The translations under genes and the position numbers were made by a program. The notes under the pieces are model-generated. The model had not been told where the DNA came from. It saw only the letters and a list, made by a program, of their open reading frames with translations, and ran no database searches. Below, piece by piece: positions 54,601 to 64,000 of a stretch of 64,000 nt of DNA (the stretch's first letter is position 1; each line of letters begins with the position of its first letter). Origin of the DNA: Antechinus flavipes (lineage: Eukaryota); the NCBI RefSeq assembly GCF_016432865.1, contig NC_067398.1, positions 55,676,001 through 55,740,000 of the forward strand, written 5' to 3'.

Positions 54601-57600
54601 ATATTTTAAAATGTACCTAAAAAATATTAACTAAGAATTTAAGTGAATGTTCACTCTACATTTTCCTTCTGTGGTGAAAGCAATATTCTAAGTTCTTGCC
54701 CTGTGCAAGATAGATGTTTTCCTTTAACAGTATTAAAATTATCTTTGAGAATTAATTGGCTCAGGGGACAAAGGCTCATGACATTGATGCAGTTTCCTGG
54801 TCACCTGAATGCAGAAAACAGGCTGGACAGTAGGGGCCAGCAGCATGACCATCACTGGCACAAGAAATCTGGGTTTGGCTGAAACAAGCCCCTATCCTTC
54901 CCCTGCTGTGGCTAAATAAACATCCTTTCGTTAATGTTAGAAGGCAAGAGGATGTCTCATTCCATTTCAATCTCAGACCTGAAGTAACAGCTTGGAGCTC
55001 CGCAAGAAGTCATTCCTTATCGTCTCCTAATGCTGATGCCTTCTTTTAGCTATCTCCAATTCATTCTGCATATATTGTTTGTATATGGCTAGTTGCATGT
55101 TGTCTCTCCCAGGAGACTGAAGTCCTTAAAGAATGGTTTTTGGCTTTATATCTCATGTACTTAACAGTGCCTGGAACTTAGAAAGCGATTAATAATGGCT
55201 CGTTGACTTGGCTTGATCTATTATTCCCTTTTCTAGACCCTGACTCAGTAGTAGGTATCTCAAATAAATCTCTTCAAGTTGAGGAGGGGTATACTTACTC
55301 ATCTGGGCCATTTCTCATGGCAGTTTTTACCAAGGTTCAGAGAACCTGAAGCTCTAACACAGGATGATGCAGTAACAAAAAGATAGGTGAATTTATTTTA
55401 AAAGAGACATCTATGTTTCTTTTATGACAAAGACACTTGAATTGCTACAATGAAACAGTCCCAGGTTCTCTTCTAAGAAAACCAAAACAACTGCAAATTT
55501 TGGAGTACCAAGGGAGAGTTTAAACTCAACCTATGAAAATGTTTTGATCAAAACCTGAATAAGAGCTATTGCTGATCATTTACATATCTAAGTTTCTATA
55601 GAAACCCATCTGTGTTTGGCATCCATCAGATATATTCTTTAGGTAATGGTTGCCACAGCAACTGATACTCTGCAGTCTCTTCCTCAGTAATAAATGCCAG
55701 AGATGAATGTTTAAGATGTCTGCAATATATATGGACCAATGGGGTTGCCTCAGACATTTCCAAGCCTTTACTCCCAGAGGGTTTCTAGAACCTACTTGGG
55801 CTTTTCCCTAAAGGATTTGGCTCAGAAATTAGGAGACTGGGGGGGGGGGGAGGGGCAGATATGGCTAAGAATTATTCAACCATTTAGGCAAGATGAACAG
55901 TAGAGGTCATGGTTTAATTGCTATAACCATAAGCATATAAGAGAAATGTGGAGATAATACAACTGAATCCCTTTATGTCTCTAATTTCCTCTTTAGTCCC
56001 CCCTTTCCTGTTCAATACTTAATCTTATTTGGGATATTGACCATTTTCCACTAAAAAGATCAAGTCCCAAATTAGCTTCTTTTTGTAACCCAATCTATTT
56101 TCCTCCTCCCTTTGTACATTGGTAAGAAATAACCCAACCCACAGATATCCTAACCCTTTAATGAGGAGATATAATGTTAGAGAAGACTGAGCAGGAATCT
56201 ACAGATTTAACAGAGATGCCAGGATACCCAGACACACATGTACCCACCCATGTAAGAATCACCAACACCCTTAGATATGGCATCTTTACAGATTTATTCT
56301 CATAATCTTTTAAGTATGTCAATTGTTATCTCTATTTTACTACTGAGAATTGAAACCAATTTGGCTTGTCTGGTACAAGCTTTTGTTTGCTTGTCAGGGT
56401 AAACAACCAGATCTCAGCTAGATAGAAACTCATTGAAGGCAGGATGGGGGGGGGGAGAGAAACTTTCATTTTTGTTTTCATATTTTCAATGCATGGCACC
56501 TCATAGCTACTTAAATGCTTGTTGACTGGTTTCTTAGCACAACCATCCTAATAGTCATAAGGACCAACGGGTGCAAGAGGGGAATGGCTCCAACAGGAAA
56601 ACAGCTCCAATTAGTTCATATTCAACACCTAGAAATCATTTCAGTGTTATCACCTCAGCAACTCATGATTATTACTACTCTATACCTCTTGTGTACCTGG
56701 TTATAGAATCTAAATTTCAAGGAAATATTGGAATATATTTCAGTAAACAACGTGGATAGAGAATGGAACCAAAAATACAAAGTGGCCAGGATAATTTTCA
56801 GTCACATCTTTACAATAATGACAATGACTGCAAATATTAGGACCACAAAATATGCTGTCACCCCCTGGGTAGTGGTTCAAATAATGTGCTCAATTTCCTT
56901 ATGAGAACCATGTGACCAACAAAAACCATGTGGTAGGCCCAGTCTGGGGAAGATGCACTGGAAGCAGTCCCTCATATGAATCAGGTAATAAAGCAGAAAT
57001 TACAGTAAATGAAAGCCACCTATCGTACAGGCTATAGCCCATAGAATCACCAACGGCTAAATGGAAAAACAAAAAAACAAAAAAAAAATCTGTGGAATAG
57101 ACCAATGGCCTGCTTGGTTGCAGAAATGGAAACAGCAAAGACAGGATCAATTTTGGCACATGGGAATCTGTCCTCTTGATATGTGGTACAGAAGTCAGAA
57201 CAGAATGTGTATGGGGCGAGACGAGAAGGTATGTAGGCTCATGAGCCCATTATAGGGAAAATCAGTTCAAAATTAAAGTCTTGGTCTTCCCTATGCCTGG
57301 GCTAATCAGCTTTAGTAAAATCCAAAGATCTGATTACTCCACCAAGTATCAATGATGAAGGAAGACAGGAGGCATCTGTGAACTGGGAAATTCAAACACA
57401 TCACCTCTCCCATATGAGTAGTAACAGCTTCAATGAAAGAATAACGGATTTAAAGTAAATATTCTAGAATAGTGAAATGTAAATACAGCTCTGTTTTGTA
57501 AATATGCCAATTCTTCTCCAATGCCCCAAACCAAAAATAACCTGTTCCTTTATATTTTATCTACTTCATTCTTATGAATGAAGATTTTACTACTAGATTG

Positions 57601-58602
57601 TAAAGTCATTGAAGATGGAGACAAAAAATTAAAATCCTTTTAAATGCACCCAGCTGTAGTATCATGGCTCAGTGAATGTGTCCTCATTGTGAGTTGAATA
57701 AGTCAAGGTGATCTCACTCTGTTTATCAGGGATTAGAGCTAAACTCCCCCCACCCTTTTATCTAGTACATCTTCCAGAGCATTAAGGCTTAGAGTCACAG
57801 TCTGATTCTGTTGCAAGTTAAACAGGTCATGTACACACTTTTTAAAATCAACCCAGGTTTCTAGTGAACATACTGCCTAAGGTCATACCACTTAAAGCAG
57901 AAATCACAAGCCAAGCAAGGCCTAGATCAGTACTGCTCAGAGACCTCCAAGGATGATCTAATTTAATAGCCTGTGCTCATTAATACCATGCAGAGGGAAT
58001 GTAGAGCTGAGAGATGTGTGCTTTCCTTCAGATGACAATTCAGGGTAAGATGTCCCAGCATGCTGCAGTGAGCAGGTGCACTGACTGCAATTCATGAGCT
58101 CCATTCCATGTGCAATACCTACCTCATGTTACTTCTTATTTGAAGATAAAGATTTACATCAACTTTGAAAATAAGTATACATTTATGTATACGCTACATT
58201 TCTTTCTCCGAGAGGCTTCTTTCCCAGTAAAGTATTATAAATAAAAATAAAAAAAAAAAACATGTCAGAGATGAGGAATTAGTCCCCCATCATATTCCAT
58301 ACTAATCTGAACAAGAAGAAGGGAGAAGGAAGAAAAGGGGGAAAGCTTGAAAGGGCACTGAACCACTTGTAAGTGGGAGTGCAGGGCTAAGATTTCCAAA
58401 AGAGACCATAATTTAAAATGTTTCTCCCTCTCTACCCTTCTCTTATTCACTTCTTGAAGACAAAATCCACCAGGCCTTTTCCTGAGGGGAAACAGTCCAT
58501 ATATATGAATGTTATATGCTCTGCTAAAGAACTAAATTCAAACATATATAATCTCTTTTCTAGCCTCTTACCCGACAGTTCTGATGTGCCAACAGACCAG
58601 AA

Positions 58603-59219
58603 TTTATTAAGTTTCATGCATATTTACTTTTAGATGTAGAATTAAGGCATCCACACGGACAGTCTACTAATTTATTGACCACTAATGCACTTTTGCCACA
58701 GATCTAAATTCAGTTCCATACCTATCCACCTATATATAAAAAGCTGTCTAACCCTCCCTCGAAAATAATGGTACCAGACTAATTGGCTATTGTAGTCATT
58801 AAAAGTCCAGTTGCATCCAGATCAGTGGTAATAAAATCATTTAGAATCTGAAATCCACATCAATGTTTTCGACAATCCAAATGAAATTTCATACCACTTA
58901 TAGCTGTTCATTTATTGAACCTAGATTTCATAATACATTGTGGATTAAACAGTTAAAAACCATTTGAAATTACTTAAATTTCACATAATACAAAATTGGA
59001 AACAGTCTTGTAATTTTATTCTTTGGACCAGAGTGAAAAAAAATGCAAGCATTTCCCCCCCTGAGGTGAGAAACTTTCTCTTACTAGAGAGAATACCATA
59101 GGGAAAAATAGCCTCAGGTGTGTTAATGATAGAAGGAAATGCATGAGTGAGAGAAAATCATGAGTCAAGCCTCTAAAAGGGTGGGAGATAAAATGCACTC
59201 CCAGAGAAAATGGTTTATT
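58603..59219 (-). terminator. Cluster of candidate TXNRD3 poly(A) signals
   Basis: Minus-strand AATAAA at 59214-59219, 59015-59020, 58911-58916, 58671-58676 and 58603-58608; which is used is unknown. Confidence 0.5.
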
Positions 59220-59687
59220 GAGAACATTACCTAGACAATGTGGAGCATTGTCTGAGGCTACAGCCTAGCTCAATCTCTGTTGTGCCAAAGGGCAAACAAA
59301 CAAGAATGAGAAGCATTCGTATGCTACTTAACAATTTGATCACAAACCGCCAGGCAAAAAATCCTCTGAGTAGTACAGAATTTTTATGGCAACCCACGCA
59401 CTCAAGCAAACCTACTGTATATCTGAACACCTTATCAGAAATATTTCCATTTCCAAGTCCAATTCATAAGAGACCCGCTGTGAATTCTAGGTTGATCTGT
59501 TAAAATAGTGCAGTTTGACAATCAACTTTACTTCTGGGTAAAGTTTTTATACAAATAACAAAGTAGAGGGACAAACATGTTGGTAACTGGGGCAAGTTAA
59601 CTGTGGCTAATTGTGCAACTCACGAGTTCCTTCAGGACTTCGGTCATCTAAACTGGAAAGGGAGGAGTCCTGACTTGCAAGGGAATC

Positions 59688-59734
59688 ATCAGTCGTAGCT
59701 CACCTCACAATAGGGTTCTGAGCTAGGACGTCAA
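59688..59734 (-). promoter_or_regulatory. SECIS element (form 2) of TXNRD3
   Basis: RNA: U-UGAC / GUCCUAGCUCA / GAAC CCU-AUUGUG-AGG / UGAGCUACGAC / UGAU. Tandem G.A quartet, 11-bp helix II with one C.C mismatch, unpaired AA and mini-stem; about 235 nt 3' of the in-frame UGA. Confidence 0.92.
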
Positions 59735-59961
59735 GAAAGCAGAATCACTGCTTTTCCAAGAAAGTCAAGATTTCTTAGGCAAATACCCTGCTGCTATGCC
59801 ATTTTCCTTGTTGATGATCTTTCCTATAACAACCAAAGAAAAGGTTTGTATCTTTTCTGAGCACTAACAAATTTGCTCTGTGTCTCTTTTACCTGAGCAT
59901 ATTTAGTTTTTTAAGTCTGAGAAAAGTATACATAACAAGGAAAACTATAAAGCAGCAGGGT

Positions 59962-60030
59962 CTAAGCTCAGCAACCTTTCTGAGAGATACTCAGACCTGA
60001 TGACTTTGTAATTTCCATAGTTGTGAAGAT
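59962..60030 (-). CDS. TXNRD3: Thioredoxin reductase 3 (TGR), last coding exon with Sec codon
   Basis: ttctttcttttaacag|ATC...; encodes IFTTMEITKSSGLSISQKGC-U-A-stop (TGA 59968-59970, TAG 59962-59964), versus recalled human VFTTLEITKSSGLDITQKGCUG. Confidence 0.96.
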
Positions 60031-60177
60031 CTGTTAAAAGAAAGAAAGAAAATAAGATATGGGTATTGTTGGTATTTTAACTTTGACAATAAAAATTACA
60101 TTTGTTGTGTCTCTCAAAAAACACCTGCTGCTAGCAGATAAAGCAATTATTCTATTTTTTTGATATTTAATCAGCTA

Positions 60178-60414
<237 letters not shown>

Positions 60415-63400
60415 TTAAAAGTGTAACTAGCAACGCCTTAACCATGATTTCAAAGCTGGAATATATATAAAGCTTCTACTACAGAACAATAATCCTATTT
60501 TGGAACTGTGTCTAGGACATTATCATGAAACGGAGCTGCTGTAAGAATCAGTTAAATGAGGCAGTAAATGCACATCTAGAGTTAATTTGCTCTCAAATTT
60601 ACCAGAACAAGCAATTTAACAACTGCATGAAGGAGTTCATTAGTATGATGTAAATTTTAGAATTATGCTCAAGTGCTACTAAACATCAACATAACAAATC
60701 AGAATTAAAGTCCAACATCAGAATATTCCTAAGAGGCTGATGTTACAGTAAATTCAGGGTGTTACTGGCCAAGGCTTCTGACATAAAATACACAGTGCTC
60801 AGAACAGTGACTCCAGAAGAATTTTACCTAATCCTCCATCCAGGTGTTTGGAGGCCACAGGTGCAGTTGTATTCACAAAAATTCTATCTACATTCTGCTC
60901 TCAGAGAATTTTCAACTGAAAGTGTTGTTAACTTTCAGGTTACTTATCTTTTGATTATTTTCAGATTCCATTCATCCATTACTAAATTAGATGACTAAAT
61001 ACTCATTACTAAACTAGATTTCTAGGCAGAGAAAGATACATAAAAGTGTGTAAAGTAGAACAATAAGAGCAGAGACAACAGAAATCTGGGCTGGGCTCCA
61101 TTGTGGAGAAGATCTGCTTAAATGATACATCCTGTTCTACAGAAGCAAGTCTATTTAACATATAGATTACATAGTATGCTGTTATGTCAAGCACTGACTG
61201 AACTGCAAACTTCTAAAAGATAAAGATTGTTCTTTTTTTCCCCCTTTTTAGAGTTCGTGAAAATCTCAGCAATTGGATAGAAACTCAAGACTTTTTGCAA
61301 CTTAAAAAAAAAGGAAATGAAAATGATCCCAAGTTCCAGTATCAGTTCTGCCCTAGATCAGCGGTAACAGCTTGGGCAAGGTCCTTTAACTTTCTAGTCC
61401 TCACTTTCCTCCTCCATAACAACAACAAAAAAAAAGGGGGAGGGGTACAAAATGAGGCATCTCTAAGAACCCTTTCCCTCCTAAGCTCCCTAAGCAAGAA
61501 TGATTCACTTTAAAATGGAGAAGAGACAAATTATCAGGTAACTTTTTCCCTAACAGTCAGAATCCACAAAAAAAATGCCTTTTAAGGCACTGCACCCCAG
61601 ATGTTTGGATATGATTGCTTAGAAGAAATCATTTGTATCCTTTAATTTAAACTGTGTTCCTTCACAAAACTGAAATTATAGAAAACTAACATTTATAATA
61701 ATCTCACACTCCAGCAATTCCAGGAGAAACTGAGGCAGAGAGAAGGTTAAGTGACTTAGCTAAGCATCACAGAGCTACTAAATTTCAAGACCCAGTGTTC
61801 TAAACACTCGGGCAACTGAGGTTTTTGTTAAGCAGAATTTAATTTCCTGATTTTGAAGCAGGAATTTTATAGAAAAATAGAAAATATTTTAATAGAAAAA
61901 GAAAAAAGGAGGATGTAAAACATAAATGCAAGTAGCTGTCATGTAAAAATATAAGGTATTATAAAATATCTTGTATTATAAAAGACTATGAAGATATAAA
62001 ATAAAAATGTAATAAAACTTTTTTTTAATGGAGAAAAAGAAACTGACTACATGTTTGGTGAAGAAAGTTCTCCCCAAAAATATAATGTCATTTAATTATA
62101 CTCAATTTTCATCACTTGTTATTACCCACTATAGATGAGTTTTACATTGAAAATATAAAATGGGGCCAAAGATATTATTTTACCATAAATGCCAGTACTG
62201 ACAATCAGCCAGGAAGTCCTTCTACTTTCTTTACCTGACAATGGAATCTTATTACTGAAATTATAAGTAACCTTTGAGTCAGCTCTCAAAAGTCTGTATG
62301 CTTCTTGGATTAGACAGTTAATTTTTAAGCCTGATCTTTTTATTATGCATTATTTTCCAACTTCTAAGTATCCAACAATCATGAAACAATGGTGTCTGGT
62401 TATGCAATATTATCACATTAGAAGGCTCTAAGAACATTGAAAAAGAGACTTCAGATACTAGCTAGAGATATCTAGTGTTTAATGACCCCTTTGTTTTACC
62501 TGTAAAGAGGAAGCAGAGTTTGGAGGGGAAAGTGTTGAGAATGCATTGCTAATTAATGTTCATTTCATGTTCTCAGGCAATGTGAGCAAAGGAGAGGAAT
62601 CCCAGAGTTGCAAGTGATGGCCAGAGTAAATACACACAGGCTCAAATGATCCTCCCTTCACAGTGCTCCAATTAGAGATCCATTTCCTGTTTTAGCCTTC
62701 AAATGCCACCAAGGGAAGGCTAAACTTTACACATGCTTCAGTGTAAATCATTTCAATCAGATAAGCAGATTTCCAAGCCCCAATATTCCACAAATTTACA
62801 AGTTCATTACTTATATAGGACAGCACACTAGCTAGGAGAACTTTGATTGGCACAGTTAAGGAGACCAGGCCTAAGAAAAAAATTATGGCCAGAGGGCACT
62901 GTGAGGCAACGGCACAGGCATCAGGAGCTGTTCAGGAGTAAGGTGTTAAGACAAAGACCAATTTTGCAATTTTGCCTACATAGCATTTTTGCCTGGGGGC
63001 TTGGAAGCACTTGGTATACACCAATGCCAGTTAAAATGTCAGGACGAGTTTGGAAATTGCAAGCCTCAGCTTCTCCCAATTTATCCTGGTCTTCCCAATC
63101 CGGACGACTCCAGTTCTGCCTCTCTAGTTAAACAGGTATCTTTCCAACCCATCCCTGAAGAAAAAGCAGAAAGTCAACTAGTCTCCTTTCCTTTTACTAT
63201 TAGTATGATGGAGGTTAAATGGCATAGGGACTGTTATATTACGTGTTCAATGGGAACTAACAAGTTAAAAAAAATTTTAATCAGAACAATAAAATACACA
63301 ACAACACAAATATGAACACAATTTTCATCTCTTCTTCATTCAGAAAGTATTTCATAATGTTGCAGGATCTCAGAACTGTCATCAAGGATATACTTTGTCA

Positions 63401-64000
63401 TAGTACTGAAAAGACACACAGGGATAGTCAGAAGAGAATTCTGATTTATGAATGCTATAGCACTTACTGTCTAAACTGCTCATTTAGGAAGTATTATACA
63501 CCTGCTTATTGTTTTAGTTATCTTTTACATGTGTCTTTTAAGAGACAGTGACTATGTAGCTCTTCTCTGTATCTCCAATGTCTGTAGATTAGATGGCTCC
63601 ATAAATTTTTGTTGGTGGAAAGAGTGTTAACAGTTTCCTTTAACTTTACTATTGGTGTAGGCAAAAATAGTAGGTAAAACTACAGCAAGAGAAGAACTTA
63701 GTATGAAATAAATCTTTGTTCTTGTTAGATTCTTTCAAATTCTTTCAAAATTCTTCAGGACATTAGAAACCTTCATTTTTACATCTTGTGCAAATAATAC
63801 CCTTTTCAAAGTCCTTTTGCAAGAACTAAGAACAAAAATCTACTTAAAAGCAAAACAAAAACAAAATTCAAAACCATGAGTGATACTAGATGATGACTAA
63901 ATGTTTCAAAATTTATGTCTAATTTTAAAATGCAAGAATACCTTTAAAATGGAAAACAATTACAAGCATACAATGTTATTAAGCTTCAATTATATAACTT

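What the first reader, a model, noticed from the sequence alone, without database searches (positions are those of the whole stretch)
59962..59976. TXNRD3 ends Gly-Cys-Sec-Ala instead of the conserved Gly-Cys-Sec-Gly
Seen: minus strand GGT TGC TGA GCT TAG. Established: vertebrate TXNRD1/2/3 end in GCUG, where the terminal Gly belongs to the flexible redox tail that moves the Cys-Sec pair between the N-terminal centre and thioredoxin. The rest of the enzyme looks intact (splice sites, HPxxxE, SECIS), so this appears to be a natural active-site variant rather than decay. The codon after UGA can also affect recoding efficiency. I do not know whether it has been reported.
Basis: partly seen in the sequence, partly recalled or inferred. 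Interest (0 to 1): 0.72.

Follow-up and report, generated by a model that had tools for sequence, protein, structure and literature searches.

The report
Marsupial TXNRD3 ends Gly-Cys-Sec-Ala
The testis-type thioredoxin reductase gene (TXNRD3) here really ends Gly-Cys-Sec-Ala instead of the usual Gly-Cys-Sec-Gly; the change is shared by every marsupial lineage I could read, in a gene that is still under purifying selection, so it is an old natural variant and not an error or decay.

Summary
Confirmed. The minus strand at 59976-59962 reads GGT TGC TGA GCT TAG, closing the last exon of a TXNRD3 orthologue. The window holds only the last two coding exons.

The base is real. Contigs from four runs of four coded organisms (about 0-3% diverged) all cover the site and show no other letter at 59965-59967. 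The only coding change is a synonymous GGT>GGA in one organism.

The same TGA GCT TAG stands in loci of Sminthopsis, Dromiciops and koala. A mis-framed opossum protein model implies Ala, or at most Val, never Gly. A bird outgroup reads TGA GGC TAA (Gly). The change therefore dates to the marsupial stem.

The gene is alive:
- Twelve marsupial species carry full-length annotated proteins with the Grx motif, CVNVGC and HPTCGE.
- dN/dS is 0.14-0.21.
- The 3'UTR SECIS is conserved with compensatory pairs, although its core is UUGA instead of AUGA.

Most likely this is a conservative, nearly neutral or mildly tuning substitution in a still Sec-dependent enzyme. I found no paper reporting it; it is only implicit in RefSeq models. 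A side observation: the Ala and stop codons lie in a conserved long-range helix that zips the UGA to the base of the SECIS.

The parts
60238..60372 (-). Penultimate coding exon of TXNRD3: [45 protein letters not shown], carrying the HPxxxE His/Glu dyad.
   Evidence: translation. Pfam Pyr_redox_dim E 3.9e-14. Best solved relatives are rat and human TXNRD1. The donor is GAG|gtaaga. The 5' boundary is inferred from a 65/66 match to Sarcophilus and Antechinus proteins.
59962..60030 (-). Last coding exon: IFTTMEITKSSGLSISQKGC, Sec, Ala, stop.
   Evidence: The peptide is identical to the Sarcophilus harrisii and Antechinus flavipes TXNRD3 tails.
59968..59970 (-). In-frame UGA (Sec codon), second codon from the end.
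   Evidence: It is conserved in all five aligned species. It lies in a 5-bp hairpin stem, 59984-59980 with 59971-59967.
59965..59967 (-). GCT = Ala, where other vertebrate TXNRDs have Gly.
   Evidence: no alternative letter in four runs. Searches show GCT in Sminthopsis, Dromiciops and koala. One search shows GGC in the bird.
59962..59964 (-). TAG stop codon.
   Evidence: It is TAG in the marsupials and TAA in the bird.
59668..59770 (-). SECIS element, type II. The core is UUGA (59734-59731) facing UGAU (59691-59688). Helix II is 59729-59719 with 59702-59692. AA at 59717-59716 is unpaired. The mini-stem is 59714-59712 with 59705-59703. There is an extra 5' hairpin at 59754-59736 and an outer helix, 59770-59762 with 59676-59668.
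   Evidence: My scan ranks it the only good candidate near the stop. The fold has z -2.8, with 0 of 200 shuffles as good. It is conserved in four marsupials and homologous to the bird element, which Rfam SECIS_1 recognises. Compensatory pairs are shown.
59951..59966 (-). 5' strand of a long-range helix. It starts at the second base of the Ala codon, runs through TAG and covers the next 11 bases.
59774..59795 (-). 3' strand of the long-range helix (59795-59785 and 59778-59774). It ends 4 nt before the SECIS outer helix.
   Evidence: The 11-bp core is kept in four marsupials; the bird keeps 8 bp, with one compensatory C-G to U-A change.

Best explanation
This is the 3' end of the TXNRD3 (thioredoxin-glutathione reductase) gene of a dasyurid marsupial. 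Its C-terminal redox tail is Gly-Cys-Sec-Ala. A Gly-to-Ala codon change (GGN to GCT) became fixed on the marsupial stem and has been kept since. UGA is still decoded as selenocysteine, through a conserved though non-canonical (UUGA-core) SECIS about 230 nt downstream. The enzyme therefore still makes the Cys-Sec selenenylsulfide/selenolthiol shuttle. The extra methyl group on the last residue keeps the free carboxylate and is expected to change catalysis little. I read it as a conservative, nearly neutral or mildly tuning substitution, not loss of function. Shown here: the sequence, its fixation across marsupials, purifying selection on the gene and conservation of the SECIS. Inferred: Sec insertion in vivo and the small catalytic effect.
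For: The sequence and frame are. Four runs from four organisms show no variant at the codon, and 27 of 28 substitutions fall in non-coding DNA (P = 0.02 for at most 1 coding). TGA GCT TAG is present in Sminthopsis, Dromiciops and koala. The opossum mis-framed model requires GCY or GTY. The bird has TGA GGC TAA, and several placental database entries end GC(U dropped)G. Twelve marsupial species have annotated proteins (all 604 aa but one of 709 aa) with CVNVGC and HPTC[G/S]E; all but Trichosurus matched my Grx-motif pattern. dN/dS is 0.14-0.21. The SECIS K-turn core pairs U.U, G.A and A.G are invariant, and helix II shows C-G to U-A and C.C to A-U changes. The bird homologue scores as SECIS_1. 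The core fits the published consensus UGAN/KGAW (PMC3753652).
Against: There is no protein or RNA evidence here: the runs were contigs only, so neither expression nor Sec insertion was seen. The SECIS lacks the usual A before UGA and gets no Rfam hit. The human TXNRD3 SECIS is already among the weakest tested (PMC2761289), so recoding may be inefficient. The six bases after UGA lie inside a conserved RNA helix, so their conservation does not by itself prove that Ala is translated or selected. The catalytic effect of a terminal Ala is untested.
Confidence: 0.72

Rival explanations
1. The amino-acid change is a by-product of, or co-selected with, an RNA structure. The G-to-C change at 59966 lets the Ala and stop codons pair with 59778-59774, extending a conserved helix that zips the UGA to the foot of the SECIS. 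That helix would tune Sec insertion against termination, in the manner of a Sec redefinition element.
For: The helix 59966-59951 with 59795-59785 and 59778-59774 appears in the single-sequence MFE (z -5.0, 0 of 100 shuffles) and in RNAalifold. The 11-bp core is kept in four marsupials, and 8 bp are kept in the bird with one compensatory pair. C59966 pairs with G59774.
Against: The 5-bp extension that contains the codon is short. One of its pairs is broken in koala, and it is absent in the bird. There is no covariation within marsupials. Both strands are simply conserved, so structure and sequence constraint cannot be separated. No functional data exist.
Confidence: 0.13
2. In marsupials the UGA now acts mainly as a terminator. 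The protein ends ..Gly-Cys, and GCT is untranslated 3'UTR that drifted from GGN.
For: The SECIS core is UUGA, not AUGA, and escapes Rfam. TXNRD3 SECIS activity is low even in human (PMC2761289). The bases after UGA may be conserved for RNA reasons.
Against: The SECIS is conserved across Dasyuromorphia, Microbiotheria and Diprotodontia, with an intact tandem G.A core and compensatory helix changes. The in-frame stop stays exactly one codon after UGA in all species. The tail preceding Cys is under protein-level constraint.
Confidence: 0.1
3. The Ala is adaptive at the protein level: it changes tail docking or substrate preference (Trx against glutathione/Grx-domain routes) in marsupial spermatogenesis.
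For: It has been fixed and kept in every marsupial lineage read. The nearby tail residues also differ from placentals: the Asp of SGLD is replaced by Ser, Thr, Asn or Arg.
Against: Gly to Ala at a free C-terminus is about the mildest possible change. There is no test of positive selection and there are no kinetic data.
Confidence: 0.05
4. It is an assembly or sequencing error, or a private polymorphism.
For: None found.
Against: Contigs of four runs from four organisms agree, as do three independent genome assemblies of other marsupials.
Confidence: 0.005

Closest known systems
Vertebrate TXNRD3 / thioredoxin-glutathione reductase (TGR) with a Gly-Cys-Sec-Gly tail
   Same: It shares the tail signature ..EITKSSGL..QKGC, the HPTCGE dyad and the penultimate UGA in the last exon, and its 3'UTR SECIS is homologous to the bird one. 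The orthologues carry the Grx domain with a CxxS motif and CVNVGC.
   Different: The last residue is Ala, not Gly. The SECIS core is UUGA, not AUGA.
Fish TXNRD1 with the atypical GNCUG C-terminus (PMC13134290)
   Same: It is another lineage-wide natural departure from the GCUG tail in a Sec-containing vertebrate TXNRD, and the field singled it out as curious.
   Different: There an Asn is inserted before Cys in TXNRD1. Here the residue after Sec is replaced in TXNRD3. That paper does not mention the marsupial case.
Insect Cys-type thioredoxin reductases ending Ser-Cys-Cys-Ser or Thr-Cys-Cys-Ser (from my own knowledge; Gromer et al. 2003, not read here)
   Same: They are natural large TrxRs whose residue after the redox pair is not Gly, which shows that the position tolerates change.
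   Different: Those enzymes replaced Sec by Cys, and their flanking Ser residues were proposed to compensate. Here Sec is kept.
Sec redefinition elements (SRE) next to UGA (from my own knowledge; Howard et al. 2005, not read here)
   Same: An RNA helix begins a few nucleotides 3' of the UGA.
   Different: Here the partner strand lies about 170 nt away, next to the SECIS, rather than forming a local hairpin. Its function is untested.

Membership tests
Sec-containing high-Mr thioredoxin reductase (TXNRD type) | Pyridine nucleotide-disulphide oxidoreductase dimerisation domain with the HPxxxE His/Glu dyad. | tested here: met
   Pfam PF02852, E 3.9e-14. HPTCGE lies at the end of the exon. The best PDB matches are rat and human TXNRD1.
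Sec-containing high-Mr thioredoxin reductase (TXNRD type) | Cys followed by an in-frame UGA as the second-last codon, in the last exon. | tested here: met
   TGC TGA at 59973-59968, with the stop one codon later.
Sec-containing high-Mr thioredoxin reductase (TXNRD type) | C-terminal tetrapeptide exactly Gly-Cys-Sec-Gly. | tested here: not met
   The last codon is GCT (Ala) in the window, in four runs and in three other marsupials. The bird has GGC. This is the variant itself.
Sec-containing high-Mr thioredoxin reductase (TXNRD type) | N-terminal CVNVGC redox centre and FAD/NADPH domains. | tested here: met
   These lie outside the window. They are present in the Sarcophilus and Antechinus proteins, whose last 66 residues match the window 65/66, and in ten other marsupial orthologues.
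TXNRD3 / TGR orthologue group | TXNRD3-type tail (..EITKSSGL..QKGC) rather than the TXNRD1-type tail (..TKRSG..LQ.GC). | tested here: met
   The window tail was compared with over 100 named TXNRD3 proteins and with a TXNRD1-like tail (P0042).
TXNRD3 / TGR orthologue group | N-terminal glutaredoxin domain (mammalian CxxS type). | tested here: met
   It is not in the window. PF00462 and a C-P-Y-S motif were found in 11 of the 12 marsupial orthologues; my motif pattern found none in the 709-aa Trichosurus protein, whose locus nevertheless lists PF00462.
Eukaryotic SECIS element (Rfam RF00031 kind) | K-turn core with tandem sheared G.A pairs, consensus UGAN / KGAW. | tested here: met
   UGAC at 59733-59730 faces UGAU at 59691-59688. 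The U.U, G.A and A.G pairs are invariant in five species. The consensus is from PMC3753652.
Eukaryotic SECIS element (Rfam RF00031 kind) | A (rarely G) immediately before the core UGA (AUGA). | tested here: not met
   It is U in all four marsupials and A in the bird.
Eukaryotic SECIS element (Rfam RF00031 kind) | Helix II of about 12-15 positions, followed by unpaired AA (or CC). | tested here: met
   There are 12 positions with 10 pairs, then G-AA-C unpaired and a 3-bp mini-stem. The compensatory changes are C-G to U-A and C.C to A-U.
Eukaryotic SECIS element (Rfam RF00031 kind) | Scores with the Rfam SECIS_1 covariance model. | tested here: not met
   There is no hit at E up to 10 in the window. 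The homologous bird element scores 25.4 bits, E 0.005, below the gathering score of 35.

The most novel reading that the evidence does not exclude
The Gly-to-Ala change is not primarily a protein change. The Ala codon and the stop codon belong to a conserved long-range RNA helix that begins right after UGA and ends at the foot of the SECIS. Together with the marsupial-specific UUGA core, this would represent a lineage-specific retuning of how TXNRD3 balances Sec insertion against termination. The terminal Ala would then be a tolerated side effect.
Probability: 0.12. Interest if true: 0.65.

Novelty: new variant of a known kind. Interest (0 to 1): 0.4.

Why it matters
The Gly-Cys-Sec-Gly tail is treated as invariant in Sec-containing thioredoxin reductases. 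A 2026 survey of vertebrate selenoproteomes singled out only the fish GNCUG tail as atypical. A whole mammalian infraclass that has run TXNRD3 with Gly-Cys-Sec-Ala offers a free natural experiment on what the residue after Sec does in tail flexibility and docking. The age is my own estimate: tens of millions of years, from the depth of the marsupial lineages sampled. The variant coincides with a second departure in the same mRNA, the UUGA SECIS core, and with a structured 3'UTR that brings UGA and SECIS together. That makes this mRNA a compact system for studying recoding efficiency. The practical stakes are modest, because the change is conservative and the enzyme is testis-specific.

Tried and rejected
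- **Rfam.** Scans of 56000-64000, 59000-59965 and 59640-59800 found no SECIS.
- **SECIS pattern search.** A simple ATGA..AA..GAT pattern was uninformative: 84 hits against 67 expected. Two ATGA candidates that I examined by eye at 59646-59700 do not form a proper core. My own scan of 56500-59961 found no better canonical AUGA SECIS; the candidates at 58293 and 56666 are distant and weak.
- **Upstream exons.** A stop-to-stop scan of 60376-64000 found no further TXNRD exon, so the rest of the gene lies outside the window.
- **Synteny.** No neighbouring gene was recognisable among ORFs of at least 90 aa, so I did not use synteny.
- **Protein databases.** All TXNRD3 entries are cut at, or lack, the U. 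The survey therefore had to go through DNA. Eight of twelve locus look-ups gave nothing usable: seven had no DNA because the file was too large (Gracilinanus, Monodelphis, Macrotis isoform X1, Vombatus, Petaurus, Notamacropus, Trichosurus), and Macrotis isoform X2 was not on record.
- **Literature.** Searches for GCUA, Gly-Cys-Sec-Ala, Cys-Sec-Ala and related terms found nothing relevant. Papers mentioning Gly499 only delete Sec-Gly. No supplements are held for PMC13134290.
- I fetched and compared no human sequence. I did not look up any N stretch.

Full report
**Observation.** On the minus strand the window reads GGT TGC TGA GCT TAG at 59976-59962. These codons close an exon that begins at 60030, after the acceptor cag, and translates IFTTMEITKSSGLSISQKGC, UGA, Ala, stop. 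The preceding exon ends ..[10 protein letters not shown] at 60238 with a gtaaga donor. The focal base 59966 is C on the minus strand; a G there would give Gly.

**What gene this is, and how much of it is here.**
- The penultimate exon is a Pyr_redox_dim segment (Pfam E 3.9e-14). It is closest to rat and human TXNRD1 among solved structures; the PDB search returned no mammalian TXNRD3 reductase chain.
- A library search with that exon, followed by two word searches, returned more than 100 named TXNRD3 proteins. Their tails read ..EITKSSGL.I.QKGC, against ..TKRSG..LQSGC in a TXNRD1-like protein.
- The window's last 66 residues match Sarcophilus harrisii and Antechinus flavipes TXNRD3 at 65 of 66 positions. 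The single mismatch is my first guess at the exon boundary.
- The organism is therefore a dasyurid marsupial.
- No further TXNRD exon lies in 60376-64000.

**Is the base real?**
- Twenty runs hold part of 58000-62000. They come from at least six coded organisms with word shares from 0.98 to 0.27. By my estimate from 31-mer survival, that corresponds to about 0-3% divergence.
- I laid contigs of X1 (organism A), X9 (D), X10 (E) and X12 (F) on 59300-60450. One contig per run spans 59300-60373, and no run shows another letter at 59965-59967.
- The only coding difference is 59974 A>T on the plus strand in organism D, which is GGT to GGA and still Gly.
- Of 28 substitutions, 27 fall in 869 non-coding bases and 1 in 205 coding bases. 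The probability of at most 1 coding substitution under uniformity is 0.02.
- X1 may be the assembly's own sample. The other three are different organisms.

**How widespread is it?** The protein collections cut TXNRD3 at the U, so I fetched DNA.

| Species | Source | Reading at the C-terminus |
|---|---|---|
| Sminthopsis crassicaudata | locus L001 | GGT TGC TGA GCT TAG |
| Dromiciops gliroides | locus L002 | GGT TGC TGA GCT TAG |
| Phascolarctos cinereus (koala) | locus L003 | GGT TGC TGA GCT TAG |
| Monodelphis domestica | mis-framed UniRef model, no DNA served | Ala, or at most Val; never Gly |
| Melopsittacus (bird outgroup) | locus L004 | GGC TGC TGA GGC TAA, that is Gly-Cys-Sec-Gly |

- For Monodelphis, the UniRef model A0A5F8GBN3 ends ..GMLSLDPAAL. 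That is the +2 frame through the same exon. Its Ser (AGY) and Leu (YTA) require the codon after TGA to be GCY or GTY.
- Several placental UniRef entries end GCG with the U dropped, or GCCG.
- PMC13134290 states that the GCUG-type tail (printed there as 'GCUC') is found across TXNRDs, and it notes only the fish TXNRD1 tail GNCUG as atypical.
- The change therefore arose on the marsupial stem. It is shown directly for Dasyuromorphia, Microbiotheria and Diprotodontia, and indirectly for Didelphimorphia.

**Is the gene alive?**
- Twelve marsupial species have annotated TXNRD3 proteins, 604 aa in all but Trichosurus (709 aa). All carry CVNVGC and HPTC[G/S]E, and all but Trichosurus matched my Grx C-P-Y-S pattern.
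- I recovered codons from three loci by tblastn, 341-378 shared codons per pair. They give dN/dS of 0.14-0.21, with dS about 0.21-0.24.

**The SECIS.**
- The only good SECIS candidate near the stop is at 59734-59688. It sits inside a three-way structure at 59770-59668 that folds better than all 200 shuffles.
- In the five-species alignment the core pairs U.U, G.A and A.G are invariant. Helix II shows a C-G to U-A double change between marsupials and the bird. A C.C mismatch in the window becomes an A-U pair in Dromiciops and koala.
- The bird homologue has AUGA and is recognised by Rfam SECIS_1 (25.4 bits, E 0.005). The marsupial element is not recognised.
- The core does fit the published consensus UGAN/KGAW (PMC3753652).
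- The human TXNRD3 SECIS is already among the weak ones (PMC2761289).

**Likely mechanism.**
- Shown: the tail keeps Gly-Cys-Sec and a free C-terminus, and the recoding signal is conserved.
- Inferred from established TrxR chemistry: the Cys-Sec pair still shuttles electrons from the CVNVGC centre of the partner subunit to substrates.
- A methyl group on the last residue removes little flexibility, because nothing follows it. I therefore expect at most a mild kinetic effect.
- The base right after UGA is G in both GGN and GCT.

**Side finding: a structured 3'UTR.**
- The 326 nt from just upstream of the UGA to the SECIS fold at -103.9 kcal/mol (z -5.0; 0 of 100 shuffles as good).
- The UGA sits in a 5-bp hairpin stem, 59984-59980 with 59971-59967.
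- A long-range helix starts directly after it. 59966-59962 pairs with 59778-59774, and 59961-59951 pairs with 59795-59785. The helix ends 4 nt before the SECIS outer helix.
- The 11-bp core is identical in four marsupials. Eight base pairs persist in the bird, with one compensatory C-G to U-A change.
- The focal C59966 pairs with G59774. This leaves open that the codon change is tied to RNA structure. However, the 5-bp extension is weakly supported: one pair is broken in koala and the extension is absent in the bird.

**Novelty.**
- Full-text searches for GCUA, Gly-Cys-Sec-Ala, Cys-Sec-Ala and related terms found nothing on this variant.
- Neither the 2012 nor the 2026 vertebrate selenoproteome paper mentions it in the passages I searched.
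- It is implicit in RefSeq models of marsupial TXNRD3, so the sequence is public but appears unremarked.

**Limits.**
- There is no expression or protein evidence.
- Didelphids are covered only indirectly, and monotremes and marsupial TXNRD1/2 were not read.
- The library does not search most subscription papers.

Noticed in passing
window 59668-59770 (-); L001 34905-35010, L002 32575-32680, L003 34415-34520, L004 20699-20766: The TXNRD3 SECIS core is UUGA in all four marsupials and AUGA in the budgerigar. Rfam SECIS_1 finds the bird element (25.4 bits) but not the marsupial one. Marsupials also carry an extra 7-bp hairpin on the 5' side of the internal loop.
   Followed up: partly
window 59951-59966 with 59774-59795 (-): A long-range helix starts inside the Ala codon and runs through the stop codon. 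It pairs with a conserved stretch just 5' of the SECIS. The 11-bp core is kept in four marsupials; 8 bp are kept in the bird, with a compensatory C-G to U-A change. The whole UGA-to-SECIS stretch folds with z -5.0.
   Followed up: partly
window 59967-59984 (-): The UGA codon lies in the 3' arm of a 5-bp hairpin (CUCAG / CUGAG). The hairpin is predicted in all five species.
   Followed up: no
window about 59630-59655 (-): An element 3' of the SECIS (AGAUGAC.GAA..UCCUGAAGGAA) is conserved between marsupials and the bird. RNAalifold pairs it with the coding part of the last exon (for example AGUCAUC with GAUGACU), which would close a domain around the UGA and the SECIS.
   Followed up: no
P0318 (UniRef A0A5F8GBN3, Monodelphis domestica): This database protein is a mis-framed, intron-retaining model. 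It reads the last TXNRD3 exon in the +2 frame through the UGA. Nearly all other TXNRD3 entries in the protein collections are cut at the Sec or have the U dropped.
   Followed up: yes
tail residues of marsupial TXNRD3 (P0243, P0248, P0305-P0314, P0319): The Asp of the placental/bird ..SG(L/Q)D(I/V)TQ(K/R)GC tail is replaced in all marsupials by Ser, Thr, Asn or Arg. The didelphids have a quite different ..SSRTVISPRGC. The tail as a whole has therefore shifted, not only its last residue.
   Followed up: no
window 41.6-42.1 kb, about 43.3 kb, 46.7-47.4 kb: There are runs of N flanked by simple repeats: CT/GA-rich sequence and ATG/ATC repeats at 43.0-43.5 kb.
   Followed up: no
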